Shown here: in pieces, positions 2,274-61,014 of the stretch
How positions within the stretch are numbered: position 1 is the stretch's first letter
Layout of the letters: the number at the start of each line of letters is the position of its first letter
Assembly: GCF_039654945.1 (NCBI RefSeq)
Contig: NW_027361690.1
Location: forward strand, 19,406,001-19,470,000
Length of the DNA stretch: 64,000 nt
Reading direction: 5' to 3'
Origin: Dendrobates tinctorius
Taxonomy: Eukaryota
The notes under the pieces: generated by a model
Told to the model about the DNA's origin: nothing
Seen by the model: only the letters and a program-made list of their open reading frames with translations
Database searches by the model: none
Translations under genes and position numbers: made by a program

Positions 2274-2307
2274 ACAGTCTGATGAAGTTCTTTAAGACTG
2301 AAACGTT
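2274..2307 (+). ncRNA. Minimal type-I hammerhead ribozyme motif (interrupted downstream by a MITE)
   Basis: CTGATGA(2279-2285)-AGTT ctttaa GACT-GAAAC GTT; AATAAA follows the MITE. Confidence 0.55.
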
Positions 2308-2310
2308 ATA

Positions 2311-2520
2311 CAGTGCTGTGCAAATTAAATGGGACAAAGCATTTTTTTAAGTAAAATCGTAAGTTGGTTACCAGTCAGTGATTCAAACCAGTTTTAACTG
2401 CTTTGAACAGGTGTGAGTGCCTGTTCAAAGCAGTTAAAACTGGTTTGAACCACTGACTGGTAACAAACTTACGATTTTACTTAAAAAAATGCTTTGTCCC
2501 AATTAATTTGCACAGCACTG
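2311..2520. mobile_element. Tc1/mariner-type palindromic MITE
   Basis: ~100-bp near-perfect arms CAGTGCTGTG...CACAGCACTG, TA flanks both ends. Confidence 0.88.
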
Positions 2521-4047
2521 TATTGTTTGTGATTGCATAATAAAACTGAATTTTCAATATCTTTACTTGAGCGCCGGAATCTTTTTTAGTAATTTGCTAT
2601 ACGGAGTGGTATCCTATCCGTGCACTCATCGAAACAGAGTGACGCAATACCCTATTTCAGATGTGAAACCACACTTACTTCAAGCCTACCCACTCCGATC
2701 AGGATTAGCCACACCATATTGTAATTTCTCAGGAATATCTTCATCTTCGGAAGCACTCTTTATTAAGGAGGAGATGGAAGTAGTCAGAAATTCTTTACGC
2801 TAATACAATGGCTTGAATTAGCCAGATGCTCTCTAAGATTTTTATCTTCTGTCATGAAAAGCATTTACAATTAATGAGTCCCACATACCGAATAGGCAGT
2901 GAGTAATAAAAATATTTAGGAATGCAACTCAGCAATGTAAGCAAGCTGCTGGTATGCTTTTGGACTGTTGTAGGTATTACGCACATGTTTAGGTGACTGC
3001 TGATGGCCATATAGTCATTTAATATAGTGTACACTTTGCCAGCATTTTTATATATTTCTCCAATCAATCTAAATATGAAATGCAAACAAAACTGAAGAAA
3101 AATCTAAATTGATTAAGTTTAGTGTCTTGGAAAAATGAGGTCTAAAGAAGGCAATGTTTAAGGTGTGGTATGCTAGGCACATCCCGTGTGAATAAGGAGA
3201 GTTTGCAGCTAGAGCTCCTTTTACCCTTGGGTCTTTGTCAGATGTCACCAAGTATTGTAGATAATGGATATAGAAGATCAAAATGGATCTCAGAAAGTTA
3301 CTTTCAACACTTCTATGTTGCAACTCTCAAAAATGTGGTGGATACTTCAAATTCTTTTCAAATTTCTGTTCTGGTTAATTAATACTGTAAAAACAGATGC
3401 GAAAATAATATAGAAGAAGTGGAATAATCTCTAGCTTTCTGAGATTCATTTTGATTCCCTGTTTCTATTATCTATTTCAATGAAAATGGCTTTGATTTAA
3501 AACGTTCTATCATTTTGTGTATCCATGCAGACCTATGTGTATTACTAAAAAAAAATACACAAAAATTGAGCTTGGTTTGAGTTGGTACACATGCAGCATA
3601 TAAATGCATGTTCATATGGCCAAAAAGCATAAAAAACCTACAAAAGACAAAATGAAAAAAACCCTGCTATAATTAAATAAGTAAAAAGCAAAATGTGCAT
3701 TTAAATCATACAGAGTTCTTAGTAATACTGTATTTGATCAAACATAGCATAAAAGCCGTCCCACCATCGACAAGGTGACTCTGTGGTCGGGGCGGTCCTA
3801 CACTGTCTAGTATTAATAACCTTATCATGTGTCAAAGTTGACGTCTGTGTGAATAAGGGCAGACAAAGACCAGGTCCCAATCACTGGACACCAGTTTTTT
3901 GACGCTTATCATATCATGAGACAAGCATAGACTAATATGACCAGTGTATGACGGCTCCAGTGCATGGCCAAAAGCCTAGTTCTGCACCACAACAGGTACA
4001 TGATGATGGGAAACTTTATACTACGTAAAATGTATACTGCCTATTAC

Positions 4048-4173
4048 CTGTGCACCCGGTGGATCCCTTCTTGCCCGAGTAACCAGGATTACAATGACAG
4101 ATGAATGAGCCTTTGGTGTTCTCGCAGCTTCCACTCAGACAGATGTTTAAATGGAGTTCACACTCATCAACAT
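4048..4173 (-). CDS. fbn1: fbn1 exon ~31: cbEGF17 ([42 protein letters not shown])
   Basis: 126 bp, AG/GT. Confidence 0.96.
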
Positions 4174-4769: not shown

Positions 4770-4960
4770 TACATGCTTCTTTCTTTCTCTTTGCCTCGTT
4801 TATCTCTCTTTATTACTCTTTCTTTCTTTATTACTCTTGCTTGCTCTCTTTCTTTTTTCCTCCTCATTCTTTCTCTTTACCCTCTCTTTCTCATGTTCCA
4901 TCTTTCTCTTTCTCTCTCTTTCTCTTTATTATTGGATCTTTCTTTCTCTCTCTTTTTTTG
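4770..4960. repeat. Degenerate CT-rich microsatellite
   Basis: Pyrimidine tract of TC/TTC repeats. Confidence 0.8.
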
Positions 4961-6398: not shown

Positions 6399-6819
6399 AG
6401 GGGTTGTACGGACTTAGGACACAAGTCTGTGACTGCATACTTGTGAATCCTCATGGAGCATTGTTGCTGGGAGAGGGCGGGCCTGTGCTTATGCAATCTG
6501 CATACTTCCGTCCACATTCCGACTAGACGTATCTTGCCTCGCTTAATACATTTGCATTGAGCAAAGCTGCGCACATCTAGTCGTTATGTGACCGCATGTT
6601 CAAAACCCCCCCTGCCCAGGAGCTGTGGTATAATCAGACCATGCTCCTGTACGGTCAGACACAGCGATTACACAGTACACAGCAGGGACACATTTATAAG
6701 ATTCTCTCAGCACAGGAACATTGTATTTATACACATCCATTTGGAGAACTTATTATTATTCAAAGATCTATTGATCAAACTATTGATTACATGTATCTTT
6801 ATTTTGTTGGAAAACCCCT
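6399..6819. mobile_element. Probable T2/Kolobok-like MITE
   Basis: AGGGGTTGT... and ...AAAACCCCT|TTAA termini; degenerate. Confidence 0.5.
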
Positions 6820-7054
6820 TTAAGCACAGTAGAACATCTAATGGGCATTTCCTACAGCCATCAGATGTAAGTCTAGGTCCTAGGTACAGATATAATACAG
6901 GGTGAGAAACTAAAGGCTTCATTCCTGTATTGGCAATACAATAAAAAGCAGTTTGGAGGTAAGTGACCACACAACATATAGACACGTCCCTTGTGGCATT
7001 GCTCACTGGAGAACAGTGGAGCTGTGAGATGTAACATATGAAAGTGTGACTGAC

Positions 7055-7180
7055 CGAGACAAGTTTTCATATCAATGGATGCCATGTACCCATCATAGCA
7101 GAGGCAGCGGTACTCTCCAGGTATGTTTGTGCACTGGCCTCCATCGCAGATGTTTGGATTAGTTTCACACTCATCGATGT
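7055..7180 (-). CDS. fbn1: fbn1 exon ~30: cbEGF16 ([42 protein letters not shown])
   Basis: 126 bp, AG/GT. Confidence 0.96.
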
Positions 7181-8897
7181 CTGTAAAGAAACACAATAAA
7201 AAGAAGCTGTAATATGTTACAATCAAGCAGATATTCAACATTTCAGAATATAATGTACGGTAAGTAAGGTGGATAAGGGAATTACAGCTTCCTACTATAC
7301 TTTGTCATACATCTTGTCTGCATCTTGAATGGAGTTCATCAAAGGAAAAAGATTGTTGCATTACAGCCCGGTTCTGCCGCTCCATATGCAGAATACGGAC
7401 TGCAATAAGGCAATGGTTTTAGGCGGCATCAGTGACAAATTTGTTCCATTACTGTGCCAATCTTTATAGGGATTTTACATGTCATTTTCCATATATAACC
7501 GACGCTATGTAAAGCAGACTTTAGAACTCCCCACTATTGTACCAACTGCATATTTGAAATTTGGCATATTTTCAGGCATTTCCTTAATGTAATCCAGTAA
7601 TCCCTGTACTGAACTGACAATATTGAGAATAATTAACTATGGGGCAACCACTAAGACTACAAACTGAACATTATGGAAATACGTAACATACTTATTAACC
7701 ATTTTGTGATTCGGGCTCTTTCTTGATCTTGCATAATTATTAAAATGAAAATAATAAAGGTACTGATTCATTAAGACTAAGATTTTGCACCAGTCGTGGA
7801 GTTAGATGCACCACATTTATCGAGAGGTGTCAGGCTCTCCAAGAGTTTGGTGCATCTTTCAGCTGCTGTGAGCTGGCGTAAAAGATAGGTTGTACGTTTC
7901 TGCCATAATTTGCCCCACTCTTGTATTGTAAATGATGATGAATTTGTTGGCAGCACTCGACCATGCCCCTTCACCGCTAAGCTCTGCACACTAAATGAAT
8001 CAGTCCAATGTATGTTGGATTTCTGACTGACTGTGGTGTACAGCACACAGCAGCTCCCATTTTGGAGACCATTTTTACTGCGTTAGTACAATGTTAACTG
8101 GAGACAGAAGTGTCCAAGTAAAATGCGTTTTAGTGAGTGTTTCTCAATTGATATATATTTCTCCGAAGATCATGTACTTAGAGTGACAATCAAAATGAGA
8201 TGTCACTGAAGCTTTCCTACACTCTTTATAACATTCTCAGACACCGTCTGACATGTTCCAGTGGTGGTAAAGATTTTATGTTGGGTTTAACAGACAATTC
8301 ACAATTTAATTACATTATCTGAGTATTATAATGATTATTTATTATTAATATTGTAATTTCTTAATTAAGAGGAAACCACTTGATTGCAGTGAACTCATTA
8401 GGACAATCCTTTTCATATATTTCCCAATGATAAACTGCTCATAATTCTTATTTTCACTGGATCTGTTGTTTTCATGAGCGAATAACCATTTAATTGCTTA
8501 CTGATGTCTTTTACACCTCATGCCTGTCTACAGCTTAAGCAATATATTAAGCAAATGTTTTACTGGCAGGGGCCCAACCACTGAGATCTCCTTACATTTA
8601 GAGAATGTTCTTTTTACAAAAGAATGAAGAGTTGTAGGGAGGAGAGGACTAGAGATTTCCCCACTCATATATGTGTTACTTCAGATTTGGAAACAGCCAA
8701 GTGAGACCTCAGTTTCCAAATCTCCTTGTCTCGTCTTTAAGGCACCCATACATATTAGAATGTTAGATGAGCTACCGATATTGACCGGATCGGCCAACAG
8801 TCTGAAATGGCGCCGGCTGACTGATAATCAGGAATGATATCGATCATGTAATGTGATCGGCAGTCCAATTACAGATTGCCGATTCTCATAGAAATAA

Positions 8898-9848
8898 TAG
8901 AATAAAACCTGAGGCGCGGTTAAGCATTATGCTTCTTTGACACACTTCCTGTTTTCTGATACAGATTATGCCCCACTTCCGTCCAGAGTGACGGTCCGCG
9001 CACACGTGGTATTGGCGCTATTGGACGTCAGTCCCCCTCCAGCTGTATTGCATTTATGTCAGAAGTAGAATATATAAGAGACATAAGTTCTGGGCCATAC
9101 ACATGCACACACTTCACAGGCAGCGGCGCAGTCCCAGGTTACCGCATTTCCCGATTTAGGTTAGTAATATATAAAAAAATTTACTATATACCGCTTACAA
9201 TATAATGTGTCTACAATGCTTTTTTTCTGTCACACTTTGAGTCTTACTCTATTTTTTACCTCTTTTTTCTCCTTTTCCTCCTTTAGAGTTTTTGAAACTT
9301 CAATATATAACCACACAGGTACTTATATCTTTGATTGCTCTCTACACATTTTCCCTATGGTACATTTAAACTGCGTTAGGCTGTAGTTTATTTATGACAT
9401 TTGAGTAACTTTTTTTCCCCCTTGTAGATTGTACCTATTGATTTATTGTAAGGATTTATCCTGATGATGGAGTCCTAACTCCGAAAAAAAATTTTTTGCT
9501 AATTTTTTTGCTAATTTTGCCAATTTCATTCTGTCAATGTATTGCTTATACTGATCAGATGTCGCTTTTTATTATAATTTTTCTCCACTTGTATGAATAT
9601 GTCAGTCAGTGATAACATATTAGTTCTATATATTTTGTGTCATTCTCAGATAGAATTTCTAATTACAATATTGTTATATTTTGTTTAGATAATACCCTTG
9701 ATAAAGGCCTGCTCGGCCGAAACGTTGGGCTCTGTGTGACTGACAATAAAATTTGCATATTCAAAAATCGTTTTTTAAGCCTCAGGTTTTATTCTATTAT
9801 TGATTGATTTTCCTGACGGCTTGGTTGTCTTTCCCCATATATATTATA
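8898..9848 (+). mobile_element. Non-coding Penelope-like/retrozyme insertion with hammerhead motifs
   Basis: 14-bp direct flank TCTCATAGAAATAA (8884-8897, 9849-9862); 23-bp inverted segment 8893-8915/9779-9801; HHR cores at 9461 and 9698; AATAAA at ~9745. Confidence 0.7.
9695..9729 (+). ncRNA. Minimal type-I hammerhead ribozyme, U3-A8 variant
   Basis: CCC-TTGATAA-A-GGCC tgctc GGCC-GAAAC GTT-GGG: stems I and II pair, palindromic AACGTT stem III. Confidence 0.7.
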
Positions 9849-10777
9849 TCTCATAGAAATAAGCCACCGGCCAACAAGTCAGTTGGCGACTTTCTCATAG
9901 AGAACACATTAGGGCTCGGCCGAGCTAACGCTCATATGTATGGGAGTGCTGGCAGAGATGGATTTCAGCTATAGCATCTTTCTGCCAACAGCCATCTATG
10001 GTGTATGGTCAGCTTTACACTTAGATGTGTAGAAAGTGGGACATATATAAGATCTTAGTGGTCTGTCTTCTAACAATCTTGTGTGGCACATATTATGAAT
10101 ATAAAGGAAAACCTAAGCTGACAAATATGTACATCTTCTCTTATGGCTGAACTTGGATTTTTTCATAAATTTCCATAAACTTCTATAACTTTTATGGTTA
10201 ATACCAATAGGCTAGTTGCTGGTATATTAAAAAAGGTGAATTCAATGTCATTGTCACTCTAACGCTAAGTTCACACAAGTATATACAAATGTTCCCATTT
10301 TTCATTTGGATTGAAATAGTCAATTTTTCATCTGGATTGTGATCCAAGTGGCATTTGTTTTTAAACATCAGCTGTTAATAAAATATACTAGACCAAAAAC
10401 AATTTCCTATGTTAATAACTGAAATTTAGTCATAAAATTGGATGCTATAAGGTTGATCTGCATGGGATCCAATTTTTTGGTGCACCCATGGACTTGCGTA
10501 GACAGGTTGTATCCAAATACAAAGAAAATTAGTTCGTGCTGCAATTTTTCGATTATGACATTTGGTTCATGTAAAAAAAAAACGGTCATCTTCACAGCTC
10601 AAATGAATAACGTTGGTTCAAGTGCTGTCAGCTTTTTTTCCAGCTTTTTCCACAGACAGAACGTAGACCAAACATTTGGTAGTGTGACCGTAGCTTCAGT
10701 CTGAATAATCTGAATAATCATACTTCTAACTGTACAATGTACACCATGGCATACCACAAAATAAATAGAAGACTTAC

Positions 10778-10900
10778 CAGTGCAGGTTCTATGATCTGGC
10801 ATTAAAGCATAACCTTCTAAGCAACTACATTCATAACTTCCTTCAGAGTTGGTACAGTTTGAGTCGCATCCACCATTGTAATGTTCACATTCATCAATAT
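10778..10900 (-). CDS. fbn1: fbn1 exon ~29: cbEGF15 ([41 protein letters not shown])
   Basis: 123 bp, AG/GT. Confidence 0.96.
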
Positions 10901-11460
10901 CTGAAAAACACATGAGCATTTCAGTATGAGAATACTCGTACTACCATAAAGGACTGATGTTCTGGTAGACGTTTGGAGAATAAAGAAGAGGTGCCATACT
11001 AAAAGCAAAAAAAAAATTGTCACAATTAGGCCTTATACATATGGTAGACACTGTACAGGGACACAGAATCTTTGTGGCTCCACAATAAGGAAACACTTGT
11101 ATTTGGTACCAATGTATGGTGCTCTGTATGGCACCATAAAAAGGGTCAGTCTCTTCCAGAAGAAGTGTCTCTATGGGAATAATTACTATAACGAAGCATC
11201 TTTTGATTTTTCTTTAGATTTTAATCTGATAGTAGACATCCCTGCTATATTCAGAGGTGAAGCAAGGACTCATACGAGATAATGGGTGGTGTACTATTGT
11301 TATCATCAACTTGTCTCCATATTATGACTATGTGCATGAGACATAATGGGAAGATTTGGTTGTTTGGCTACTTAAATGTGCCAATACAGTAAAATATAAT
11401 TTCAGACATATCACTACAATATATATTTGAGATAGAATTTACTAAACAAATGTCACTTAC

Positions 11461-11586
11461 CAACACAGGCGAGTTTATCAGGGGATGGTTGGTATCCTGG
11501 ATCACAAGCACACTGGTATCTCCCAATCAGATTGATACAGCGACCATTTCTGCACAGATCAGTACTGAGCCCACACTCATTGATAT
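11461..11586 (-). CDS. fbn1: fbn1 exon ~28: cbEGF14 ([42 protein letters not shown])
   Basis: 126 bp, AG/GT, manual translation. Confidence 0.96.
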
Positions 11587-13074
11587 CTAGAGAAAGGAGG
11601 GAAATATTGCTATGAGAAAGAAGGTGGATATCTCATTTTTACCATCACAGACCTAGTATCATAGATGCCAGACGTTAACAATGACGTGATTTCAAATACA
11701 TAATATTAATGAAATGTTTTTCCTGATTGGTAACTCTAGAGCGAGGACTTTATTTTATTATAAGACAGTTATAAATGTCTTTAAAAAGCATAAATCACTG
11801 TAACGCAAACGCTATGGGGCAAACACTGCAGAATTCAGGCTGAGCTAACTTACATGTCCTTATCCTAAATAACATCTATACTACAGACAATTTATTACAC
11901 AGCCAAGGGCTCTATGACTATTGGGACTCGCCTTACCAGAAACAATACATCTTCATCATGTTATGCAAATATAGCATAGTATAGAATAGCATTTCATGGG
12001 AATTTAGTACTTGCTCTCACTATACACGGAAAAAGCCATATGTGAATCAGGTGATAAACCATTGATCGAGGACAGTGGTTCATAGAAATAATTATATTCC
12101 TTTCTAGAGTCCTTTCAGCTCACTTATTTCCATGTAGGGTGCTTGCTAGGCAGCACACAAATACATATGGTCGATCAGCAGCAGTTTGCAGCTCTAGATC
12201 TCTACTGGTGGGGTTAATAATGCTTGATATTATCACTTTATTTCATTGGGGTACAGTTCTCAGTGCTGAAAAATGGCTCAAGGAGGTGAGAAATGGGGGA
12301 TATTTTTATTGAACTGTTTCAGCAACAAGCACTGAATGTATAGGATTGTTTTGGGACACCAACGTACATAATACAAAATCTACTAAAATCTTAGTTTGTC
12401 ATTGCCCAAGACCATAAGTGTCAGTATGTCACTATTGAAAGTCAAACAGAAGTTTGCCGTTACCCCCGGAGAATATAATAACTAGTAGACAGTGGCTAGT
12501 GGCGACATTCATGGGCACATTGTAGCTCCAGTGTTTTGACCACAACGCCGGGATTTCTTATTATGCTACATAATGAGTTCAGATTCCCAAGGAACTTGGT
12601 AGTTACGGTAAACCTCAGGGGAACTGGAAGTTTTAGCAGCCTGTATTACAGTATGAAAGCGGAATATGAGTGTATTCAGATTGATGCTGTATCTCCACAA
12701 AACTGAACACAAGGGAAAATAGAGCAAATATAATTATCTATGCACCCAACTGTTAACATGTAGAAAGCTGTATCAAAAATATATTATTTTTATTTTTTTA
12801 TGGCAGACATCTGTTCATACACAAAACATACAGTATATGTACAGTATAACCATCATTTTTGTGTGCCATTGAACTAAATTAATCAAATTACTGAGAAGAA
12901 CAGAAAATGTACCCAAATGGAAAATGTATCTGAATATATATATGATAGCATTTGGTGCTCTACTAACGTTGTATCATTTATAGAAAGATGTTCTGGGACT
13001 ATTTATATACATAAAAGATGGATATTTTCGCTAAGGGCTGCAGTTTTGAATGTAACACATTGCACCCAACTTAC

Positions 13075-13200
13075 CTAGGCAAGCGGAATTATCAGGTGCC
13101 ACTTCATGTCCAGGAGGGCATTCACATTTAAAACTTCCCTCTGTATTTAGACAGATGCCACCACGACACAAAAGTGGGTTCCTTTCACACTCATCAATAT
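13075..13200 (-). CDS. fbn1: fbn1 exon ~27: cbEGF13 ([42 protein letters not shown])
   Basis: 126 bp, AG/GT. Confidence 0.96.
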
Positions 13201-13765
13201 CTGGAACACGTAAAAAAAAAGGCCTTACAGTTCCATTAAAACACAATTTTGAGATTATTATGATCTGGCTTGGCTAATAAGCCTAACCATGTTGCAAGGT
13301 TCATAACAAGGTTGGACCTAGACTTAACAATAGTCACTTTAAAAAGCTACTACAAAGTGAAATTGTTCTTCCTTTTCAAGATAGAGCTAATTTTAATGTT
13401 TTTCTCAAAGTATACTCAATCAAAGTTAAAGAAAACATGTCAGAAGCATAGGACTGTTTAGATTAAAGTAAAGTCTAAATACGTAAATAGGAAAATGTTG
13501 CAATAGCTGAATGTCGTCCTGACCAATGTCAACATGCTAAAGACTTGACTGGGAAGAAGTGTTCCACCAATGTCAACGATCTTATTTGGTGACTCCCCTA
13601 CATGATTCTTCCTGCTAATAGATTGTATAACCCGCATGTTCACAATGAAGTTGTTGATGAAGAGATCTTCAAAAGGGCTTACAAATTTACACAACACAAA
13701 TTTATAAAAATAGGAATAGCAATTTTCAGAGACTGAATATCACTTTGCAAATGAGCATCACTCAC

Positions 13766-13894: not shown

Positions 13895-13972
13895 CTAAAA
13901 TGATAAGAGTAGTTCATTTATATCTCCTCCGTAACACTGAAGAGTCATAATATTGTAGATATGAACACTTAC

Positions 13973-14098
13973 CTGTGCAATTTCTTTCTTCAGCATCCAA
14001 GGCAAAACCATTGTCACACCGGCACTTGAAGCTACCGATTGTGTTTCTACATTTACCATATTTGCAAAGACTTGGAATCATTTTACATTCATTGATGT
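13973..14098 (-). CDS. fbn1: fbn1 exon ~25: cbEGF11 ([42 protein letters not shown])
   Basis: 126 bp, AG/GT. Confidence 0.96.
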
Positions 14099-14934: not shown

Positions 14935-16723
14935 AGGTCAGCTCTCACCTTTGCTAAGCAGGCCTACTTTACATCCCGTGTATCTTCCTTGTCCGACAAC
15001 CCTAAACAGTTGTTCAACACTTTTAACTCCCTCCTCCGTCCACCACTGCCCCCTCCAATTTCCGTAATCTCTGCCGAGTAAACTTCGCCATGCACTTCAA
15101 AAACAAGATAGACGAAACACGGCAAGTCTTTATTATTCAACCACCACAACCTCTTTTATACCAGACCAATGCCCAAACCCCATTACCTCCTTATCCAACA
15201 TCACAGTACCACCTTTATGCCGATGATACTCAGATCTACCTCTCTGGCCCAGACGTCACCTCTCTGCTGTCCAAAATCCCGGAGTGTCTATCAGCCATAT
15301 CCTCCTTCTTCTCCTCCCTCTTCCTCAAACTGAATGTGGACAAATCTGAACTGATCATCTTTCCCTCATTTCACAGATCTTCCTTACCTAACCTATCTAT
15401 AACAATTGACGACATCACGCTTTCCACCTTACCGGAGGTCCGCTCCCTCGGAGTAACCCTTGACTCTGCCCTGTCCTGCAAACCGCACATCCAAGCTCTC
15501 TCCACTTCCTGCTGCCTCCAGCTCAAAAATATTTCCAGAATCCATCCCTTCATCAACCCTCACTCTACTAAAATGCTTGTGCATGCCCTCATCATCTCCC
15601 ATCTCGACTACTGCAACATCCTTTTCTGTGGCCTCCCTGCTAACACCCTCGCACCTCTCCAGTCCATCCTTAACTCTGCTGCCCGACTAATTCATCTCTC
15701 TCCTCGCTACTCCTCCGCTTTTCCCCTCTGCAAATCTCTTCACTGGCTCCCACTCTCTCAGCGTATCCAATTCAAATTACTAATACTGACCTACAAGGCC
15801 ATCTATAACCTGTCTCCTCCATATATCTCTGAATTAATCTCCCAATATCTCCTTCACGTAAACTCCGATCCTCCCAAGACTTCCTTCTGTCCTCCACACT
15901 TAGGGTACCGTCACACTTGGCGACACACCAGTGATCCCGACAATGATGCGACCTAGTAGGGATCGCTGGTGCGTCACTACGAGGTCGCTGGTGAGATGTC
16001 AAACAGGCAGATCTCAACAGCGACCCAGCAACGATACAGAATGATATGACGGGCGATGGGACACTGTCTCTCAGACCTGTAGTCTTGAGGTCGTTCGTCG
16101 TTGTCCCTGTCAAACACAACGATGCATGCTGGCCAGCGGGACACCAGCGATCAAAAAATGGCCCAGGATATTCGAGCATGATCAGTGACATCACAGCAGG
16201 GGCCCGATCGCCGCTATGTGTTACACGTAGCGAGATCGCAGGAGAGATCGCTGTTGCGTCATGAAATCGGTGACACAACAGTGATCTCGCTAGCGATCTC
16301 GCTATGTGAGACGGGGGCTTTATTCGCTCCTCACCCAACCGCCTCCAAGACTTCTCCCGAATAGCCCCCATCCTCTGGAATTCTTTGCCCCAACACGTCC
16401 GGCTATCAACCACACTCGGATCCATCAGACGGAACCTGAAAACCCATCCCTTCAGGAAAGCCTACAGCCTGCAATGATCCCCGCTGCCCCCTCACCACTA
16501 CTGGAGCCACCGCATCACGATCACTGGAGCTGCTGCAACCCCCCAACCTACTGTCTCCTTCCCCACCATCCTGTAGAATGTAAGCCCGAAAGGGCAGGGT
16601 CCTCTCTCCCCTCTATATCAGTCTGTGATTGTTAGTTTGTTTACTGTAAGTGATATCTGCAATTTGTATGTAACCCCTTCTCATGTACAGCACCATGGAA
16701 TCAATGGCGCTATATAAATAAAT

Positions 16724-16755: not shown

Positions 16756-16757
<2 letters not shown>

Positions 16758-17149
16758 GGTCATTGTTCCGCTGGGACCTGCTGGATGGAGTGCCTAGCAC
16801 CAAGATTGTCCAAGGATACCTTTTTGAGCTTTGATCTCAGACACAGTTTACAAAGATAAACTTTGTCATGTGAGTGTATGATGGGGAGCTGCCTAAACAT
16901 TTAGATCATATACAGAGACTTTCCAACACCTTTATGTAGGGGTCAAATACTGCAAGATGTTAAAAAATCGCCCCTAAAAACAAAGCTATTGAATGCTTTC
17001 TAAATTTAGTGTCATTCCTATATCACCAGTACAAGGTTCACCTGCTGCTTCTTGTCATTGTAAAGTTGTGATGGATGCTTCATACAGTAGAAAGCTATCA
17101 AATTGTAGATAGATATGAAAGCAAATCAGTTACTTAATTTTTCTCTTAC

Positions 17150-17374
17150 CTTTAGAGAATGTTTTTCCTGGTGTAATTTCCCTTGAAGAAAAGCCAGGGC
17201 CTCTGGGGCAAATGATCTCAAACTCTGGGGTGCCCTGAAGTGGACATTCTTCACAGTCAGGTCCCCAAGCTGCCCCAACAGAACAACAGCAAGCATCCAT
17301 CCTATGGCGACCAGAAATAGGAGCAGAACACTCCTCCTCCTCATGCTTCAAATAGCAGATCTCCACACGAACGT
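17150..17374 (-). CDS. fbn1: fbn1 exon ~24: TB3 ([45 protein letters not shown]...PGKTFSK)
   Basis: 225 bp, AG/GT, 8-Cys TB pattern. Confidence 0.96.
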
Positions 17375-21929: not shown

Positions 21930-22828
21930 CACTCACTGGCCACTTTATTAGGTACACCTGTCCAACTGTGTGTTAAGACTTAATTTCTAATCAGCCAATC
22001 ACATGGCGGCAACTCAGTGCATTTAGGCATGTAGACATGGTCAAGACAATCTCCTGCAGTTCAAACCGAGCATCAGTATGGGGAAGAAAGGTGATTTGAG
22101 TGCCTTTGAACGTGGCATGATTGTTGGTGCCAGAAGGGCTGGTCTGAGTATTTCAGAAACTGCTGATCTACTGGGATTTTCACGCACAACCATCTCTAGG
22201 GTTTACAGAGAATGGTCCGAAAAAGAAAAAAAATCCAGTGAGCGGCAGTTCTGTGGCCGGAAATGCCTTGTTGATGCCAGAGGTCAGAGGAGAATGGGCA
22301 TACTGGTTCGAGCTGATAGAAAGGCAACAGTGACTCAAATTGCCACCCGTTACAACCAAGGTAGGCAGAAGAGCATCTCTGAACGCACAGTGCGTCGAAC
22401 TTTGAGGCAGATGGGCTACAGCAGCAGAAGACCACACTGGGTACCACTCCTCTCAGCTAAGAACAGGCATCTGATGGCTACTTTCAGCAGGATAATGCGC
22501 CATGTCATAAAGCTCGAATCATCTCAGATTGGTTTCTTGAACATGACAATGAGTTCACTGTACTCAAATGGCCTCCTCAGTCACCAGATCTCAATCCAAT
22601 AGAGCATCTTCGGGATGTGGTGGAACGGGAGATTCGCATCAGGGATGTGCAGCCGACAAATCTGCGCCAACTGTGTGATGCCATCATGTCAATATGGTCC
22701 AAAATCTCTGAGGAATGCTTCCAGCACCTTGTTGAATCTCTGCCACGAAGAATTGAGGCAGTTCTGAAGGCAAAAGGGGGTCCAACCCGTTACTAGCATG
22801 GTGTATCTAATAAAGTGGCCAGTGAGTG
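21930..22828 (+). mobile_element. Tc1 transposon, internally deleted
   Basis: TA|CACTCACTGGCCACTTTATTAG...CTAATAAAGTGGCCAGTGAGTG|TA; ORF from 22078 encodes paired-like HTH; out-of-frame QDN and WPPQSPDLNPIE remnants. Confidence 0.93.
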
Positions 22829-37714: not shown

Positions 37715-39260
37715 CAGTACAAACCAAAAGTTTGGATACACCTTCTCATTCAAAGTGTGTTCATTATTTTCATGACTATGAAAATTGTAGATTCACTCTG
37801 AAGGCATCAAAACTATGAATTAACACATGTGAAATTATATAATTAACACAACAGTGTGAAACAACTGAAAATATGTCATATATTCTAGGTTCTTCAAAGT
37901 AGCCACCTTTTGCTTTGATTACTGCTTTGCACACTCTTGGCATTCTCTTGATGAGCTTCAAGAGGTAGTCACCGGAAATGGTTTTCACTTCACAGGTGTG
38001 CCCTGTCAGGTTTAATAGGTGGAATATCTTGCCTTATAAATGGGGTTGGGATCATCAGTTGTGTTGTGCAGAAGTCTGGTGGATACACAGCTGATAGTCC
38101 TACTGAATAGACTGTTAGAAATTGTATTATGGCAAGAAAAAAGCAGCTAAGCAAAGAGAAACGAGTGGCCATCATTACTTAAAGAAATGAAGGTCAGTCA
38201 GTCCAAAAAATTGGGAAAACTCTGAAAGTGTCCCCAAGTGCAGTGGCAAAAACCATCAAGCGCTACAAAGAAACTGGCTCACATGAGGACCGCCCCAGGA
38301 AAGGAAGACCAAGAGTCACCTCTGTTGCAGAGGATAAGTTCATCCGAGTCACCAGCCTCAGAAATCGCAGGTTAACAGCAGCTCAGATTAGAGATCAGGT
38401 CAATGCCACACAGAGTTCCAGCAGCAGACACATCTCTACAACAACTGTTAAGAGGAGACTTTGTGCAGCAGGCCTTCATGGTAAAATAGCTGCTAGGAAA
38501 CCACTGCTAAGGACAGGCAACAAGCAGAAGAGAAATCTGTGCTTTGGTCTGATGAGTCCAAATTTGAGATCTTTGGCTCCAACCACCGTGTCTTTGTGCG
38601 ACGCAGAAAAGGTGAATGGATGGACATGCCTGGTTCCCACCATGAAGCATGGAGGAGGAGGTGTGATGGTGTGGGGGTGCTTTGCTGGTCACACTGTTGG
38701 GGATTTATTCAAAATTGAAGGCATACTGAACCAGCATGGCTACCACAGCATCTTGCAGCGGCATGCTATTCCATCCGATTTGCGTTTAGTTGGACCATCA
38801 TTTATTTTCCAACAGGCCAATGACCCCAAACACACCTCCAGGCTGTGTAAGGGCTGTTTGACCAAGAAGGAGAGTGATGGGGTGCTACGCCAGATGACCT
38901 GGCCTCCACAGTCATCAGATGAGATGGTTTGGGGTGATCTGGACCGCAGAGTGAAGGCAAAAGGGCCAACAAGTGCTAAGCATCTCTGGGAACTCCTTCA
39001 AGACTGTTGGAAGACCATTTCCGGTGACTACCTCTTGAAGCTCATCAAGAGTGTCCAAAGCAGTAATCAAAGCAAAAGGTGGCTACTTAGAAGAACCTAG
39101 AATATAAGACATATTTTCACTTGTTTCACACTTTCTTGTTAATTATATAATTCCACATGTGTTAATTCATAGTTTTGATGCCTTCAGAGTGAATCTACAA
39201 TTTTCATAATCATGAAAATAAAGAAAACTCTTTGAATGAGAAGGTGTGTCTAAACTTTTG
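37715..39260 (+). mobile_element. Tc1 transposon with long TIRs; transposase pseudogene
   Basis: TA|CAGTACAAACCAAAAG start; ATG 38129 followed by early TAA; GRPR, KHGGGGVMVWGCF, FQQANDPKH and WPPQS motifs; right TIR lacks its last ~10 bp. Confidence 0.93.
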
Positions 39261-39905
39261 TGATGTATTTGCCCCCTGCGTCACCTGTGATGTATATGCC
39301 ACCAGCGTCTCCGGTGATGTATTTCACCCCCTACGTTTCCTGTGATGTATATGCCGCCAGAGTCTCCCGTGATGCATATGCCCCAGCATCTCCTGTGATG
39401 TATATACCCCCAGCATATCCTGTGATGTATATGCTCCCCAGCATCTACTGTGATGTATATGTCCCCAGCATCTCCTGTGATGTATGTGTTCCAACCCCAA
39501 TATATCCTATATGATGTATATGCCCAAGTCCCAACCTTTACTGTGAGATGTATATGCTCCAGTCCAAACGTCTCTAGTGTGATGTATATGCTGCAGCCCC
39601 GGGTGTCTCCTGTGTGATATATATAGAGCAGTCTCAGTGTCTCCTATGTGATGTATAAAGAGCAGTCTCGGTGTCACATTTGTGATGTATATACTACAGA
39701 CCCCCCCCCCTGCTTGAGATCTAGAAATTAAAATGTCACATGAGCAGTGATGAATTTCCCACTATGAGGAGACGTAATGTAATGTACATCTGTGTTCAGA
39801 ATTTACTGTTGCAAGTTCTTTTCAAAATTAATTGCAAAGACTCGACTGCGCTCCAGACGGATGCAAATCTGGAAATTCAGTTGCAAATAGCAACATCATT
39901 AATAC

Positions 39906-49886: not shown

Positions 49887-50335
49887 CATAATCAGCTTTC
49901 AATGGTTCAAAAATGGATGTTCTCCAGCACCAAAGGAAAGTAGTTAAAACTTACCTTTAATCATACAGGCTAACAAAAAATTGTTGGAATGTGAACATAT
50001 TAAAAAAAGTACAAAGCTTACGTGTTTAGAGTAGGTTTATAAACCTAGGTAGAAGGATAAAACCTACTTGAAACGCGTAAGCATTATGGGTTTTCTTAAT
50101 ATGTGCACAATCTGCCAAATTTTTATGCTATATGATTGAAGGCTAAGCTTTAACTATTTTCCTTTGGTGCTGGAGAACATCCCCTTTTGGACCACTGAGA
50201 GCTATATGACCTGGAAGCCATACTCCATGCACCACACCCAGATCACAGACTGTCCACCTTAGAAGTTTCCTGGGACACTTATTTCTAACACCAGTGGTAA
50301 GCTGAATTGACACGTTTTCTCATTTTTGTACATAC
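49887..50335 (+). mobile_element. Degenerate Penelope-like fold-back insertion
   Basis: Imperfect palindrome 49887-50208 with GAAACGCGTAA next to the centre; tail with GGTAAGCTGA; same layout as 60563-61014. Confidence 0.55.
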
Positions 50336-53200: not shown

Positions 53201-54904
53201 CTAAAATGTTGAAAATATGTAGGAGAAAAATTAGAACAATACCAATATAACACAAAAATTGCAAAATACATTCTTAAAGCACAGTTAAATATTTTATAAT
53301 TATATTCGGTATTACTATTACTGGAGGCCAAAGTGAATATTATTGTAAGTAGGTTGGATCTGAAACGAGCGTAGAAGAGTTTTGGTTGGGTGTTGTTAAA
53401 CTTTCACTATAGAATAACATTGTAGATTATCTCTACGAGAGTTTTAATTACTGAAGCTAGAAACCCAACAGGAATAAAAAAAAAGTTTAGAGACATGACA
53501 TAGAAAGGGGAATTCCTTAAAATATAGTCAGAAAGAATGCAAATCCCGAGGATTAAACTGCATTCCTTTCATATTCTTAAACCCAAGTAACAGACAAAAA
53601 TTCTTATCGAATATATCCCTGGCCACAAGTCAATGCATCCATTTACTGTACCTTTTAACAACAAAAATAATTTGTGGCTAAAAACATAAATTCAATCAAA
53701 ATACCTAAAGGCACATTCTAGCAAAAGTATTTATTTATTTTTTTTTTACAAAGAAAGCTAAGAATATATTATATGTGTATAAAAAGTTATTTTTCATCAC
53801 AATCTGGAAAAAAGATCAAGACTCAGTAAAGACTGTCGCTCATTCATAATTCTATCCCTTAGGTAAATAGGTAGCGCTTTCCAGTCAAACATTCTTTCCT
53901 AAATTGAGCCGACATTCATCTTCTTCACATTGCTATGTGCTCCCAGAGTTCTTTCACTAGATAAATAATTTACAAACTGCAATTCTGACCTATTTTGTGC
54001 AGATTAGGTGTGAGTCAATCAATATTGTCAAAAAATCATCCGAATAGAATCCTTTAGTGTGTAGCCTGCATCTGCTGCCCTTCTATTTTATAAACTATGG
54101 TTTCTAAAAGTCAAATTTGGATAAAAAAATATTTCGAAAAATTGCATTTAATTTAAAATTAAAGTCTTTATCTTATGTAATATATTTGCATGCTGTATAC
54201 TAGGTAATCAATATGTTTTAATGAATTTGGCACCATTTAATTTTTCTGCTGGTCAAACCATAGATTTTTTTATAAGCTGTCTGAACATTTTTTTACATAC
54301 ATGATCCAATAACCAGGGCCAGTAGATCTACAGTAGATCCCAAAATAATCATGATGGGTCCAGGAGAGGAAAAAAGGGGAATATAACTATTAATTAAAGC
54401 AATTAAAGATAATTTTCATCAGAAAAAGTCCTAAATTATTACATGTTAATTTGACCTAATTCTAAAAATTAAAGAAGTACGTCCAGCTATGTATTTTTGT
54501 TTTAAATGTGTGTGTATGTACATGCAGTGCAGTGTGAGTGTATTAATATACTCAACTACTGCCAATCTCTATCTGGTATCCAGCACCATTCTGCTCCTCT
54601 TCTCAGTGGCATCACCTCTCTGAAAATACTATGTGTTACCCTGTACTCTGTGTGATCCGGAAGTGACTTTTACAATATAAGCTTTTGGAGTGTCAGAATG
54701 AATCTCAATAGGCTTTCACTTTAAAAGAGACTTCCAGCTCATGCATAGAGCAAGAGTGAGCCGGCTAGTCTGAAGCGTGGTGACGTCACTGAGAAGAGGA
54801 GCAGAACAGCGCTGGATCCCAGAGAAAGCGGCGGTAGGCGAGTATATTAATATACTCACACTACATTACATGCGCATATACACATATTTAATAAAAAATA
54901 TTTC

Positions 54905-55922: not shown

Positions 55923-55957
55923 TCTAGATGGAAGCTCTTATGTAAGTTACCAATATA

Positions 55958-57633: not shown

Positions 57634-58540
57634 TATACTAGTATAAAAATGTTAATATCCATACGCTGTGATAGACGTGAACATCCATATATTAATGATA
57701 GATCTGTTTTAGTGGATTAAATGAATTTATTTATGTATTTATTTATATAACTTTTCCAATGATGGATATGCCAAAGAGGGATTACAAAAAAGCTGCTCAT
57801 TCCAACCCTGGGTACTTTGGGTACATAATCCATTCTTAAAAAGCACAGGTACAGTTGAGTATCCAGCAAAAGTGGCAAGCAACCAATGTTCCAAAGAGAA
57901 GTTTCCTAGGATACAATTTATGACTTGGCATCCTGTGTCTCAAAGCATGACTCACCACAAAACTTTTGGACTCAACAATGATGTTTATGAACCAACATTC
58001 TCAAGTATAAATTCCACACACTGCCAAATGTATTACACTAACATTTCACCAGCGCAGGATTCACAGTGCTCGCGGCATTTCAGCTTCTAACAATAAAATG
58101 ATCTTTGCTTTCACAGTGACTTGTACATTCGTTCGCAATCGGCATTTTCCATTCGCAAAGAAACCATAAAAAATGCCAAGGCTGATGTCTCTGGCATATG
58201 CTTAGATGAGGATTTTCATTTTTGTTACCATGCCGGTATCCTTCTTATCCTTCGTCTGTTCTTTAGTTTCTTTTTAACTTTTGTTTCATGTTAAACTACT
58301 TATTGTATTATATTCTCATAGTGCAGCTCCATGTGAAAAAAACGAAAATCCGGTGATCAGCTGTACTTGCCTCCAAAGTGTAACTTGCTTGTACAGCAAT
58401 GTTTCATAGATTCCTGTTTTCCTCAAAACCAAAAATGAAACTTGTGCTGACCATAAACCTATAACTAAGCAACACTGGCATTTTGAAACATACAAAATAT
58501 TTTGAATGCAAAATGTACTGGTAATATCTTTTTTACATTG

Positions 58541-58770
58541 TCAGCATTGTGGCTCAGTGGTTAGCACAGCTGCAGTGCAGTTCTGGGGTCTTGGGTTCAA
58601 TTCCCAACAAGGACAACATCTGCAAGGAGTTTGGGTGTTTGTGTGAGTTTCCTCCCATACTCCAAATACATACTATTAGGGAATTTAGATTGTGAGCCCG
58701 AATAGGGACAGTGATGACAAAATCTACAAAGTGTTGTGGAATATGATGGTGCTATAGTAAAAAATAAAAT
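58541..58770 (+). mobile_element. tRNA-derived SINE with L2-like tail
   Basis: A box TGGCTCAGTGG, B box GGTTCAATTCC; tail TAGATTGTGAGCCC... resembles the L2 3' ends in this window. Confidence 0.7.
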
Positions 58771-60562
58771 ATTGTGGCACATTGTTATCACTAACAAATC
58801 ATTGTTACCACTATTGTTATCTTTCCAAAATCTACAGTGGCTTTATCTGTGGTCAAGAACAAGGGAACTATATATGAGACGGTGCAGAGCAAGCAGAGCT
58901 CCTAGACCACATATTTCAAACTCTGACCTGCAGGGTGAGTATATTTGGCCTGCGATGCCAGGCGGGTCCCCCGAGTCTATATGGCCCGCGATGCCAGGCA
59001 GGGCCCTCAAGTATATTTGACCCGTGATGCCAGGTGGGTCCACTGAGTATATCTTGCCTGTGACACTGGGTGGGTTGCCCGTGACACTCGGTGGGTCTCC
59101 CACCCTCCCGCCCAGGATAGCACTTTCAATGTTGGCATCCTAGATGTCAATACAGTTGAAAGCAATGAATGATAGAGGAGGGAGCGTCCTCTCACCTCAC
59201 TCACCCTCTGTATCTGATCTCCCAGTGCTGTACCGAGTGCAGAGAATCTGAAGACACCACGCAGAGACCATGGGGGGCCTATTGTATTGTATGGAGCACT
59301 GTGTGGGGGGCCCTGTTATACTGTATGGAACACTGTGTGGGGTGTCCCCATTATACTGTATGGAGCATTGTGAAGGGGGTGTACCGTTATACTGTAAGGA
59401 ACACTATGGTGGGGGGGCCTGTTATACTTTATGGAGCACTGTGGTGGGGGCCCATTATACTGCATTAAGCACTGTAGTATGGAGGCCCTATTATACTGTA
59501 TGGAGCACTGTGGTGGGGGCCACATTATACTGTATGGAGCACTGTGGTGGGGGGCCTGTTATACTGTATAGAGCACTGTGATGGTGGGGGCATTATACTG
59601 TATGGAACACTGTGGTGGGGGCCCCATTATGCTGTATGTAGCACTGTAGTAGGGGCCCCATTATGCTGAATGAAGCACTGTCATGGGGGGCCTGTTATAC
59701 TGTATGAAACAATGTGGTGGAGGCCCGTTATACTGTATGGAACACTGTGGTACAGGATAACGCTCCCCCCCCACAGTGACCATACAGTATAATGAGGCCT
59801 CCCCACCATAGTGCTCTATATTGTATGGATCACTGTGGTGAGGGCCTGTAATACTGTATGGAGCACTGTGGTGGTGGACCCTGTTATACTGTATGGAGCA
59901 CTGTGGTGGGGGCCCATTATACTGTATGGAGCACTGTTGCGGGGGCCCCATTATACTGTAAGGAGGACTGTGGTGGGGTGGCCTGTTTTACTGTATGGAG
60001 CACTGTCTGGGGGGCCCCCATTATACTGTATGGAACAATTTGTGTGTGGGCCACATTATACTGTATGGAGCACTGTCAGGGGGGCCCCATTATACTGCAT
60101 GGAGCACTGTGGCAGGGGGCCCTATTATACTGTATGGAGCACTGTTGTGGGGGGGTCCGTTATACTGTATGGAGCACTGTGGGGGAGGCCCTGTTATACT
60201 GTATGGAGCACTGTCTGGGGGGGGGGGCTCCCATTATACTGTATGGAGCACTTTGTGTGTGGGCCTATCGTCATACTGTATGGAGCACTGTGTGGAGTGG
60301 GGCATTATACTGTCTGGAGCAAAATGGTGGGGGCTCCTGTTATACTGTATGGAGCAATGTGGTGGGGGACCCGTTATATTGTATGGAGCAACGTAGTGGG
60401 GTACCCCCCATTATACTGTATGGAGCACATTGTGGGGCCCCCCCGTTATACTGTATGGAGCACTGTGGTGGGGTGGCCCGTTATACTGTATGGAGCACAG
60501 TCATGGGGGGCCTAGTTATATTGCATGGAGCACTGTTCCGGAGGAGCCCTGTTATACTGTAT

Positions 60563-61014
60563 CAAAATAAAGGATGGAATCTCCAGCGCTGGACTTCAGT
60601 TAAAAATTCATCATTTATTGGAAATTCTTAAAATCGGACAGAAAAAAGTATGAATAAGGACATACAGGCAGATGGGGTCTCTGGTGGTCTCCAACCAACG
60701 CGTTTCGACCTAGAAGGTCTTACTCATGGTTGACCATGGAACCATGAGTAAGACCTTCTAGGTCGAAACGCGTTGGTTGGAGACCACCAGAGACCCCATC
60801 TGCCTGTATGTCCTTATTCATACTTTTTTCTGTCCGATTTTAAGAATTTCCAATAAATGATGAATTTTTAACTGAAGTCCAGCGCTGGAGATTCCATCCT
60901 TTATTTTGCTTCAGTCAACGCCCCTGATCAAGGTGACTCCGTGCGCAGGAGGATTATGGATCGTAACTGAGACTGGTGAGCTGACCTCCCCTTATTTTCC
61001 CTATCCTTCTACAA
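60563..61014 (+). mobile_element. Young Penelope-like/retrozyme fold-back insertion
   Basis: Perfect 169-bp arms (60563-60731 / 60740-60908), 106-bp unpaired tail, 14-bp TSD CTGTTATACTGTAT. Confidence 0.8.
60740..60778 (+). ncRNA. Minimal type-I hammerhead ribozyme, A3-U8 variant (mirror copy on minus strand at 60693-60731)
   Basis: AACC-ATGAGTA-A-GACC ttcta GGTC-GAAAC gc GTT-GGTT. Confidence 0.7.

What the first reader, a model, noticed from the sequence alone, without database searches (positions are those of the whole stretch)
2274..61014. Recurrent ORF-less hammerhead-bearing insertions with a shared grammar: candidate family of Penelope-driven retrozyme-like elements
Seen: four loci with little overall sequence similarity (~2274-2640, 8898-9848, 49887-50335, 60563-61014) share parts of one + strand layout. 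(1) A full or partial minimal hammerhead core ending GAAAC(GC)GT(T/A), with a palindromic stem III (AACGTT or ACGCGT). (2) AATAAA downstream in three of them. (3) A G(C/T)GC(C/T)GGA motif followed by a pyrimidine run (~2571, ~50167, ~60882). (4) In two, a GGT(G/A)AGCTGA donor-like motif ~35-40 nt before the 3' end. Three begin with an inverted copy of their own 3' region, and two have 14-bp TSDs. Established: Penelope-like elements carry minimal type-I hammerheads in pseudo-LTRs, often with inverted 5' segments, and non-autonomous retrozymes exist. Inference: several divergent non-autonomous families are being mobilised in trans. Four in 64 kb would imply a high genomic copy number.
Basis: partly seen in the sequence, partly recalled or inferred. 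Interest (0 to 1): 0.85.

Follow-up and report, generated by a model that had tools for sequence, protein, structure and literature searches.

The report
Truncated Penelope insertions with hammerhead ribozymes
These four short non-coding inserts in a frog genome are the ribozyme-carrying tail ends of Penelope-type jumping genes, a kind of debris already described by the thousand in frogs, so the finding is real but ordinary.

Summary
All four loci exist and carry Penelope-type minimal hammerheads.

**What each locus holds**
- L2 (8898-9848) has a U3-A8 core, plus a second, imperfect canonical core 232 nt upstream.
- L4 (60563-61014) has an A3-U8 core on both arms of a 176-nt, 99% palindrome.
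- L1 (2270-~2633) has a canonical core.
- L3 (49890-50335) keeps only the 3' half of a hammerhead.

A strict descriptor finds 3 motifs in the window against 0.12 expected.

**Insertion evidence**
- L2 and L4 have exact 14-bp target duplications.
- Contigs from three related species show the empty L2 site, so L2 is a recent insertion.

- L1 and L2 are homologous over about 137 nt.
- L1's palindrome is a nested foldback insertion that interrupts helix I. It is not the element's own inverted copy.
- GYGCYGGA is unspecific (16 sites in the window).
- Only the roughly 35-nt hammerhead of L2 is highly repeated. The L2 body is low-copy.

**Reading**
Inverted 5' copies, target duplications and a 3' "tail" are the published signature of Penelope integration. 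None of the four is a head-to-tail tandem, so none meets the retrozyme definition. Whether the template RNAs were autonomous or non-autonomous could not be tested here. The non-autonomous hypothesis is itself already published for Xenopus.

This scan has noted such elements about 110 times in this genome. Verdict: already known, low interest.

The parts
2270..2309 (+). L1, 5' part: canonical minimal hammerhead (CUGAUGA ... GAAACGUU), with the cleavage site after 2307
   Evidence: It aligns with the L2 hammerhead. Helix I is 5/5 paired only after 2310-2523 is removed.
2310..2523 (.). Nested foldback or MITE-like palindrome inside L1. Arms are about 104 nt and 97% complementary, with an 8-nt loop. 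Ends read CAGTGCTG... and are flanked by TA/AT.
   Evidence: L2 has no counterpart. The sub-threshold miRNA hits in Rfam reflect the hairpin shape only.
2524..2633 (+). L1, 3' part: homologous to the last ~120 nt of L2 (TGTGAYTG, AATAAAA, ACGG..TGGT). The 3' end is approximate and no TSD was found.
8884..8897 (.). L2 left target-site duplication, TCTCATAGAAATAA
   Evidence: The empty site in three species keeps one copy.
8898..8915 (-). L2 short inverted 5' copy of 9779-9797. The match extends 5 nt into the TSD as microhomology.
   Evidence: I1: 23 nt, 100%
8916..9455 (+). L2 non-coding body. It is low-copy and present only in organisms A and B. It holds TATA-like and splice-like motifs (inference: pLTR leader).
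9456..9500 (+). L2 hammerhead 1: CUGAUGA, extra U, GGAGU/ACUCC helix II, GAAA, A/U palindromic helix III. Helix I has one mismatch, and the strict register puts G at position 17.
9695..9729 (+). L2 hammerhead 2: U3-A8 covariant core (UUGAUAA), extra A, GGCC/GGCC helix II, GAAACGUU, helix I CCC/GGG. It is highly repeated in four species.
   Evidence: loose ends at 9694/9695 and 9729-9731
9802..9848 (+). L2 47-nt 3' 'tail', lying beyond the inner start point at 9797-9801
   Evidence: The inverted 5' copy ends at the complement of 9801. Another family copy stops matching at 9801 (record 7). Model from PMC11167929.
9849..9862 (.). L2 right target-site duplication
49890..50048 (-). L3 inverted 5' copy (old; arms 77-86% complementary)
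50049..50335 (+). L3 direct copy. It keeps only the 3' half of a hammerhead (GAAACGCGUA at 50070-50079) and has TGGTAAGCTGA at 50295-50305. No TSD is recognisable.
60549..60562 (.). L4 left TSD, CTGTTATACTGTAT, inside a 35-bp satellite
60563..60731 (-). L4 inverted 5' copy, with a complete A3-U8 hammerhead on the minus strand (60691-60733)
60740..61014 (+). L4 direct copy: A3-U8 hammerhead at 60740-60778 (AUGAGUA, extra A, GACCU/AGGUC, GAAACGCGU, helix I AACC/GGUU), AATAAA at 60852, TGGTGAGCTGA at 60974-60984
61015..61028 (.). L4 right TSD

Best explanation
The four loci are products of Penelope-like element (PLE) retrotransposition in a frog genome. Each is the 3'-terminal, non-coding, hammerhead-bearing part of a PLE-type transcript (pseudo-LTR region), copied from its 3' end and truncated at the 5' end.

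**Proposed mechanism.** The PLE endonuclease cuts both target strands with a 14-bp stagger, which gives the TSD. Reverse transcription primed on the bottom strand gives the direct copy. Priming on the top strand, from a start point further inside the RNA, gives the inverted 5' copy. That copy is 18 nt long in L2 and about 160-170 nt in L3 and L4. The stretch between the two start points is the 3' 'tail'.

**Lineages.** At least two are represented.
- L1 and L2 (GAAACGUU type) are homologous, with about 120 nt from the cleavage site to the end.
- L3 and L4 (GAAACGCGU type) have about 240-256 nt from the cleavage site to the end, and a shared landmark 41 nt before the end.

**State of each copy.**
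- L1 was later split by an unrelated foldback insertion.
- As inserted, L3 and L4 are hairpins, and L1 and L3 lack a working ribozyme, so they are dead on arrival.
- L2 is a recent insertion, absent from three related species.

**Shown:** motifs, repeats, TSDs, the empty site, the L1-L2 homology.
**Inferred:** which enzyme acted, the two start points, and the source RNA.
For: - **Hammerheads.** A strict descriptor gives 3 hits against 0.12 expected. L1 qualifies once the nested palindrome is removed.
- **Published PLE traits.** All intact motifs show the extra base after A9, G10.1-C11.1 in L2 and L4, and palindromic 15.2-16.2, as listed in PMC4209133. The U3-A8 core of L2 is a published PLE variant.
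- **Inverted 5' copies and TSDs.**
- **Empty site.** In organisms B, C and D a joint 8883->9849 skips 965 nt, with long flanking pieces.
- **Tail.** A second family copy stops matching at 9801, where the inverted copy also ends. This fits the two RT start sites, the 'tail', and the extension of both target strands shown in vitro for an Anolis PLE. It also fits the inverted 5'-truncated copies and 30-40-bp tails described for PLEs in general.
- **L1-L2 homology.**
- **Autonomous partners.** Earlier notes from this scan report PLEs with RT and GIY-YIG in this genome (unverified).
Against: - No copy of any of the four families could be linked to an RT/GIY-YIG ORF here. The window holds no recognised PLE ORF (only the ten longest non-tandem ORFs were scanned), and other genomic copies could not be fetched.
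- L2 has 830 nt upstream of its hammerhead with no coding remnant. That requires a long pLTR or a non-autonomous source.
- The distance between inner and outer start points is 47 nt in L2 and 105-130 nt in L3 and L4, longer than the published 30-40 nt.
- L1 and L3 have no recognisable TSD.
- Rfam hammerhead models do not score any motif.
Confidence: 0.75

Rival explanations
1. The loci, L2 above all, are copies of dedicated non-autonomous PLE-derived elements (monomeric relatives of vertebrate non-LTR retrozymes). Such elements carry only the pLTR-like RNA recognised by a PLE reverse transcriptase and are mobilised in trans.
For: - L2 is 951 bp with no coding remnant.
- It has two different hammerheads 232 nt apart on one strand.
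- It inserted recently.
- Its body belongs to a low-copy family restricted to organisms A and B.
- Li et al. 2026 report 57 Xenopus retrozyme families that sit beside PLE pLTRs in trees, with many dispersed monomers.
Against: - There is no head-to-tail tandem at any locus.
- The hammerheads are the minimal PLE type, not the canonical type I of retrozymes.
- L3 and L4 are palindromes, typical by-products of PLE integration.
- 5' truncation of autonomous PLEs gives the same picture.
- No RNA run holds the region.
Confidence: 0.2
2. Some of the motifs, chiefly L3's half hammerhead and L2's first hammerhead, are chance resemblances inside unrelated repeats. On this view the 'grammar' is a post-hoc pattern.
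For: - GYGCYGGA has 16 sites in the window and AATAAA occurs about once per kb.
- L3 and L4 show no alignable similarity beyond the hammerhead.
- An unanchored 10-of-11 match arises in 112 of 300 shuffles.
- L2's first hammerhead fails the strict descriptor.
Against: - GAAACGYGT occurs 3 times against 0.21 expected, and all three are at these loci.
- L3's palindrome centre lies inside the hammerhead, exactly as in L4.
- TGGTRAGCTGA lies at the identical distance from the 3' end in both.
- Strict hammerheads are about 25-fold over expectation.
Confidence: 0.05

Closest known systems
5'-truncated Penelope-like element insertions with minimal hammerheads (Cervera & de la Pena 2014, PMC4209133; Craig et al. 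2021, PMC8557442)
   Same: - Minimal type I hammerhead with a palindromic helix III, an extra base after A9 and the G10.1-C11.1 pair.
- The U3-A8 covariant core.
- Mostly single, dispersed, ORF-less motifs. About 9,000 were reported in Xenopus tropicalis.
- Pairs on opposite strands 100-700 bp apart.
- An inverted 5'-truncated copy next to the direct copy, a 3' tail, and TSDs.
   Different: - The A3-U8 core of L4 was not found in the paper library.
- Inner-to-outer end distances are 47-130 nt rather than 30-40 nt.
- No link to an ORF could be shown here.
Poseidon PLE of Anolis carolinensis, in vitro mechanism (Frangieh et al. 2024, PMC11167929)
   Same: - The hammerhead lies about 100 nt upstream of the insertion's 3' end.
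- There are two internal RT start sites that define a tail.
- Both target strands are cut and extended, which accounts for the inverted 5' copies.
- Targets are AT-rich (TCTCATAGAAATAA, CTGTTATACTGTAT).
   Different: - In Anolis the ORF starts inside the hammerhead. Here no ORF start follows the hammerhead, and L1, L2 and L4 carry AATAAA instead.
- L2 shows a 5-nt microhomology at the top-strand junction, whereas the Anolis enzyme initiates without homology.
Vertebrate non-LTR retrozymes (Cervera & de la Pena 2020, PMC7229834; Li, Clavereau & Pollet 2026, bioRxiv 10.64898/2026.07.22.740005)
   Same: - Non-coding, low GC, hammerhead-bearing, with TSDs longer than 4 bp.
- Found in amphibians, and proposed to be mobilised by PLEs.
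- Monomeric dispersed copies exist.
   Different: - Retrozymes are defined by head-to-tail tandem monomers of 150-450 bp, each with a canonical type I hammerhead, that yield circular RNAs.
- None of the four loci is a tandem, the hammerheads are the minimal type, and no RNA evidence exists.

Membership tests
Penelope-like element (PLE) insertion | Minimal type I hammerhead with a conserved core, palindromic helix III (15.2-16.2), an extra base between A9 and 10.1, and a G10.1-C11.1 pair | tested here: met
   L2 hammerhead 2 and both L4 arms pass a strict descriptor (3 hits against 0.12 expected). L1 passes after the nested palindrome is removed. L3 keeps only the 3' half.
Penelope-like element (PLE) insertion | 5' truncation with an adjacent inverted 5'-truncated copy | tested here: met
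   L2 has 18-23 nt at 100%. L3 has arms at 77-86%. L4 has 176-nt arms at 99%. L1 does not show this; its palindrome is a nested insertion.
Penelope-like element (PLE) insertion | Target-site duplication and a demonstrable empty site | tested here: met
   L2 and L4 have exact 14-bp TSDs. The L2 site is empty in three related species. L1 and L3 have no recognisable TSD.
Penelope-like element (PLE) insertion | An optional 30-40-bp tail between two RT start sites at the 3' end | tested here: inconclusive
   In L2 the inverted copy and a second family copy both end at 9801, 47 nt before the 3' end. L3 and L4 share a landmark 41 nt before the end. Their inverted copies, however, start 105-130 nt inside.
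Penelope-like element (PLE) insertion | Family members joined to an ORF with telomerase-like RT and GIY-YIG endonuclease | not testable with these tools
   No PLE ORF was recognised in the window (only the ten longest non-tandem ORFs were scanned). Other genomic copies could not be fetched. Earlier notes report such ORFs elsewhere in this genome.
Metazoan non-LTR retrozyme | Head-to-tail tandem of two or more 150-450-bp monomers, each with a hammerhead | tested here: not met
   None of the four loci has a direct tandem repeat. L2's two hammerheads are unlike each other and are not parts of repeated units.
Metazoan non-LTR retrozyme | Canonical type I hammerhead (helix I about 6 bp, helix II 4 bp, loop-loop contacts) | tested here: not met
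   Helix I is 3-5 bp and open, with no loop 1. No Rfam hammerhead model matches, even at E<=10.
Metazoan non-LTR retrozyme | [quoted passage not shown] | not testable with these tools
   No listed run that holds the region is on record as RNA, and every run is kept as contigs.

The most novel reading that the evidence does not exclude
L2 may represent a young, low-copy, ORF-less unit of about 950 bp, derived from a PLE and restricted to two sister species. On this reading it has its own promoter-like and intron-like leader and two unlike hammerheads 232 nt apart. It would be a non-tandem, non-autonomous parasite of PLEs that could release a roughly 232-nt RNA. The A3-U8 core of L4 may also be a naturally active hammerhead variant not yet described.
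Probability: 0.15. Interest if true: 0.4.

Novelty: already known. Interest (0 to 1): 0.15.

Why it matters
It matters little as a discovery.
- Minimal hammerheads in truncated Penelope copies have been known in frogs since 2014.
- The non-autonomous 'retrozyme' reading was published for Xenopus in 2026.

The useful outcomes are corrections and confirmations.
- L2 is a clean, dated insertion: it has an empty site in three related species, a 14-bp TSD, a short inverted 5' piece and a 47-nt tail. This genomic pattern agrees with the two-start-site, both-strand priming model derived in vitro for an Anolis Penelope element.
- The A3-U8 core recurs in this genome and would be worth a cleavage assay.
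- This scan has already noted Penelope/hammerhead elements about 110 times in this genome, and follow-ups reached the same verdict.

Tried and rejected
- **Rfam.** Searches at gathering thresholds and at E<=10 found no hammerhead. The minimal motifs lie outside the models. The only hits were sub-threshold miRNA-like matches to hairpins.
- **blastn of each locus against the window.** No cross-similarity and no further copies. A more sensitive local alignment then recovered the L1-L2 homology.
- **Spurious ORFs of L2 looked up in public assemblies,** to reach other copies. They are not on record.
- **Exact-pattern scans.** Both hammerhead types were searched in metagenome contigs, and the L2 type also in viral contigs. 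All returned zero. These collections hold hardly any frog DNA, so the blanks mean nothing.
- **Look-ups by sequence in the scan's notes.** Blank, and stated by the operators to be uninformative.
- **TSD search for L1 and L3.** Nothing better than 10 nt with 2 mismatches.
- **TA-flank variant for L1.** Excising the palindrome with this variant does not restore helix I; the AT/TAT variant does. The exact boundaries of the nested element stay ambiguous.
- **GYGCYGGA as a family signature.** Rejected.
- **Rejected reading:** that L1's palindrome is the element's own inverted 3' region.


Full report
**Setting.** The window is frog DNA (earlier notes of this scan). GC content is about 36-46%. It holds many transposon remnants and minisatellites. 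Calcium-binding EGF-like exons lie on the minus strand (ORF 6873-7241; further EGF-like and 8-Cys-like ORFs at 13031-13246, 13914-14081 and 17130-17366). From that spacing, L2 lies in an intron and is antisense to the host gene; this is an inference.

**The observation.** All four loci are present as described and have no coding capacity. A search for CTGANGA...GAAAC finds only L1's core plus two unrelated sites. That search misses covariant cores, so I wrote a descriptor after Cervera & de la Pena. It requires N3-UGA-N-N8-A with a Watson-Crick 3-8 pair, helix II, GAAA, a palindromic helix III, H17 and helix I. It returns three hits against 0.12 expected in 100 dinucleotide shuffles.
- L2 at 9695-9729 has a U3-A8 core.
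- Both arms of L4 have an A3-U8 core.
- L1's canonical core passes, with a perfect 5-bp helix I, only when 2310-2523 is removed.
- L2 has a second, canonical core at about 9456-9500. It has a 5-bp G-C-closed helix II, the extra base after A9, and an A/U palindrome. Helix I has a mismatch, and the strict register puts G at position 17.
- L3 has only ...GAAACGCGUA.

GAAACGYGT occurs three times against 0.21 expected, always at L3 or L4. Rfam's hammerhead models do not score any of these, even at E<=10. That is expected for motifs with no helix III hairpin.

**Architecture.**
- *L4* is inserted in a 35-bp satellite. Removing the insert and one copy of CTGTTATACTGTAT restores the satellite register, so the 14-bp TSD is real. 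The insert is an inverted copy (60563-60731), 8 nt, then the direct copy (60740-61014). The arms are 99% complementary.
- *L3* has the same plan with arms at 77-86% and no TSD left, so it is old.
- *L2* has an exact 14-bp TSD. Its inverted 5' piece of 18-23 nt copies 9779-9801.
- *L1* differs. Its 104-nt arms (97% complementary, 8-nt loop) start at the base after the hammerhead cleavage site. They have CAGTGCTG... ends flanked by TA/AT and have no counterpart in L2. With the palindrome removed, L1 aligns colinearly with the last ~140 nt of L2, covering the hammerhead, TGTGAYTG, AATAAAA and ACGG..TGGT (score z 7.7, 0 of 500 shuffles). I read the palindrome as a later nested foldback or MITE-like insertion. 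Its resemblance to Tc1-type ends rests on my memory of Tc1 termini and was not tested.

**Short motifs.**
- GYGCYGGA has 16 sites in the window, and the other sites are unrelated.
- AATAAA occurs about once per kb per strand.
- TGGTRAGCTGA starts exactly 41 nt before the 3' end in both L3 and L4. A 10-of-11 match within +-6 nt arises in 29 of 1000 shuffles, but unanchored in 112 of 300.
- L3 and L4 otherwise show no alignable similarity beyond the hammerhead.

So there are two lineages, L1/L2 and L3/L4. There is no single grammar beyond the generic PLE signature.

**Related genomes.** Seventeen runs from five studies hold part of 8000-12000. None is on record as RNA, and all are kept as contigs. 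I laid contigs of the source organism (A) and three relatives (B, C, D) on 6500-12000.
- In B, C and D a contig joins 8883 to 9849, skipping 965 nt. That is the element plus one TSD copy. The sides are long (199-255 nt or more), and the flanks differ by about 4-8%. L2 is therefore an insertion specific to the lineage of organism A.
- All three empty sites carry 8 extra letters between 8883 and the TSD. A small target deletion therefore accompanies the 5' junction in the window.
- Only about 9695-9730, the hammerhead itself, collects very many contigs in all four species. These have poorly agreeing loose ends on both sides, so many families share one hammerhead type.
- The 730 nt upstream collect few contigs in A and B and none in C and D. 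The tool warns that these depths are not copy numbers.
- One 1,707-nt contig of organism A matches 9663-9801 and then diverges.

**Mechanism.** The literature held here describes exactly this picture.
- Minimal hammerheads sit in PLE pseudo-LTRs. About 9,000 occur in X. tropicalis, mostly single and ascribed to truncated PLEs. A U3-A8 variant exists, as do pairs on opposite strands (PMC4209133).
- PLE insertions are highly 5'-truncated, often with an adjacent inverted 5'-truncated copy and a 30-40-bp tail (PMC8557442).
- A purified Anolis PLE protein cuts and extends both target strands and starts reverse transcription at two internal sites that define the tail. The hammerhead lies about 90 nt upstream of those sites (PMC11167929).

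L2 fits this model. The direct copy ends at 9848. The inverted piece begins at the complement of 9801, and another family copy ends at 9801, giving a 47-nt tail. A 5-nt AATAA overlap at the left junction suggests microhomology in top-strand priming; this is an inference. In L3 and L4 the inverted copy starts 105-130 nt inside the direct copy's end, longer than published tails.

Folded as RNA, L4 is a 168-bp perfect hairpin (-344 kcal/mol) and L3 a long imperfect one. The ribozyme is buried in both. These copies are by-products, not functional units.

**Autonomous or non-autonomous source?** This could not be settled here.
- No PLE ORF was recognised in the window (only the ten longest non-tandem ORFs were scanned). 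The only RT remnant, at 15090-15956, matches only the generic RT family (RVT_1, below its cutoff); that it is LINE-type is my reading of its motifs (YADD...LDYCN).
- Attempts to reach other copies failed.
- L2's 830 non-coding nt upstream of the hammerhead leave room for a dedicated non-autonomous element. That hypothesis is itself published. Cervera & de la Pena 2020 propose PLEs as mobilisers of metazoan retrozymes. Li, Clavereau & Pollet 2026 show that 57 Xenopus retrozyme families sit beside PLE pLTRs and have many dispersed monomers.
- By the defining features of retrozymes (tandem monomers, canonical hammerheads, circular RNAs), none of the four loci qualifies. Two features were tested and not met, and one is untestable.

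**Verdict.** The class assignment to Penelope machinery is well supported. The 'new family of retrozyme-like elements' is not shown, and would not be new. The scan has already noted Penelope/hammerhead elements about 110 times in this genome. An earlier follow-up on a similar palindrome reached the same conclusion (s1-376828).

The only mildly fresh points are the A3-U8 core and the genomic support for the two-start-site model. The A3-U8 core was absent from the paper library under that name and is noted ten times by first readers here.

Noticed in passing
window 8883/8884 (L2 left junction): The empty-site contigs of three related species carry 8 nt (CACATTAT) between 8883 and the single TSD copy. 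These 8 nt are missing in the window, so a small target deletion accompanies the 5' junction of the insertion.
   Followed up: partly
window 2310-2523: This 216-bp near-perfect palindrome has CAGTGCTG... ends flanked by TA/AT and is nested right after the L1 hammerhead cleavage site. It is probably a Tc1-type MITE or foldback. It produces sub-threshold Rfam miRNA hits (MIR6135 at 72 bits against a gathering score of 99), which are hairpin artefacts.
   Followed up: partly
window 60740-60778 and 60691-60733 (minus strand); 9695-9729: Natural hammerhead cores show compensatory 3-8 pairs: A3-U8 (AUGAGUA) in L4 and U3-A8 (UUGAUAA) in L2. U3-A8 is published. A3-U8 was not found in the paper library under that name, but first readers noted it ten times in this genome.
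   Followed up: partly
window 6500-6867: An extremely abundant short repeat, with a unit of about 113 nt between loose ends at 6609 and 6722. Summed contig depth is 50,000-276,000 in all four related species.
   Followed up: no
window 9157-9428: Inside L2 there is a splice-donor-like AG|GTTAGT and, about 270 nt downstream, a polypyrimidine tract plus TAG. A TATA-like box lies upstream at about 9065. This may be a retained pLTR intron and promoter, as known for Penelope. No RNA evidence is available.
   Followed up: no
window 15090-15956; 22078-22602; 37718-39267: Other transposon remnants are present. One is an RT fragment that I read as LINE-type (YADD...LDYCN). There are also two Tc1-type transposase remnants. 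The second Tc1 remnant lies between 222-nt terminal inverted repeats that are 92% complementary.
   Followed up: no
window 24292-25653; 34224-37714; 39259-39693; 59271-61670: Several minisatellite arrays are present: a 24-nt G-rich unit with 60 copies, 26-27-nt units, and 34-36-nt units. The last array is the target of L4.
   Followed up: no
window 54550-54900: Two about 90-nt stretches on opposite strands resemble each other around GYGCTGGA (54579-54586 on the minus strand, 54809-54816 on the plus strand). They are probably the inverted ends of another, unrelated element.
   Followed up: no
window 6873-7241, 13031-13246, 13914-14081, 17130-17366 (minus strand): Calcium-binding EGF-like and 8-Cys-like coding pieces on the minus strand suggest a fibrillin- or LTBP-type host gene. 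L1 and L2 lie antisense in or near its introns.
   Followed up: no
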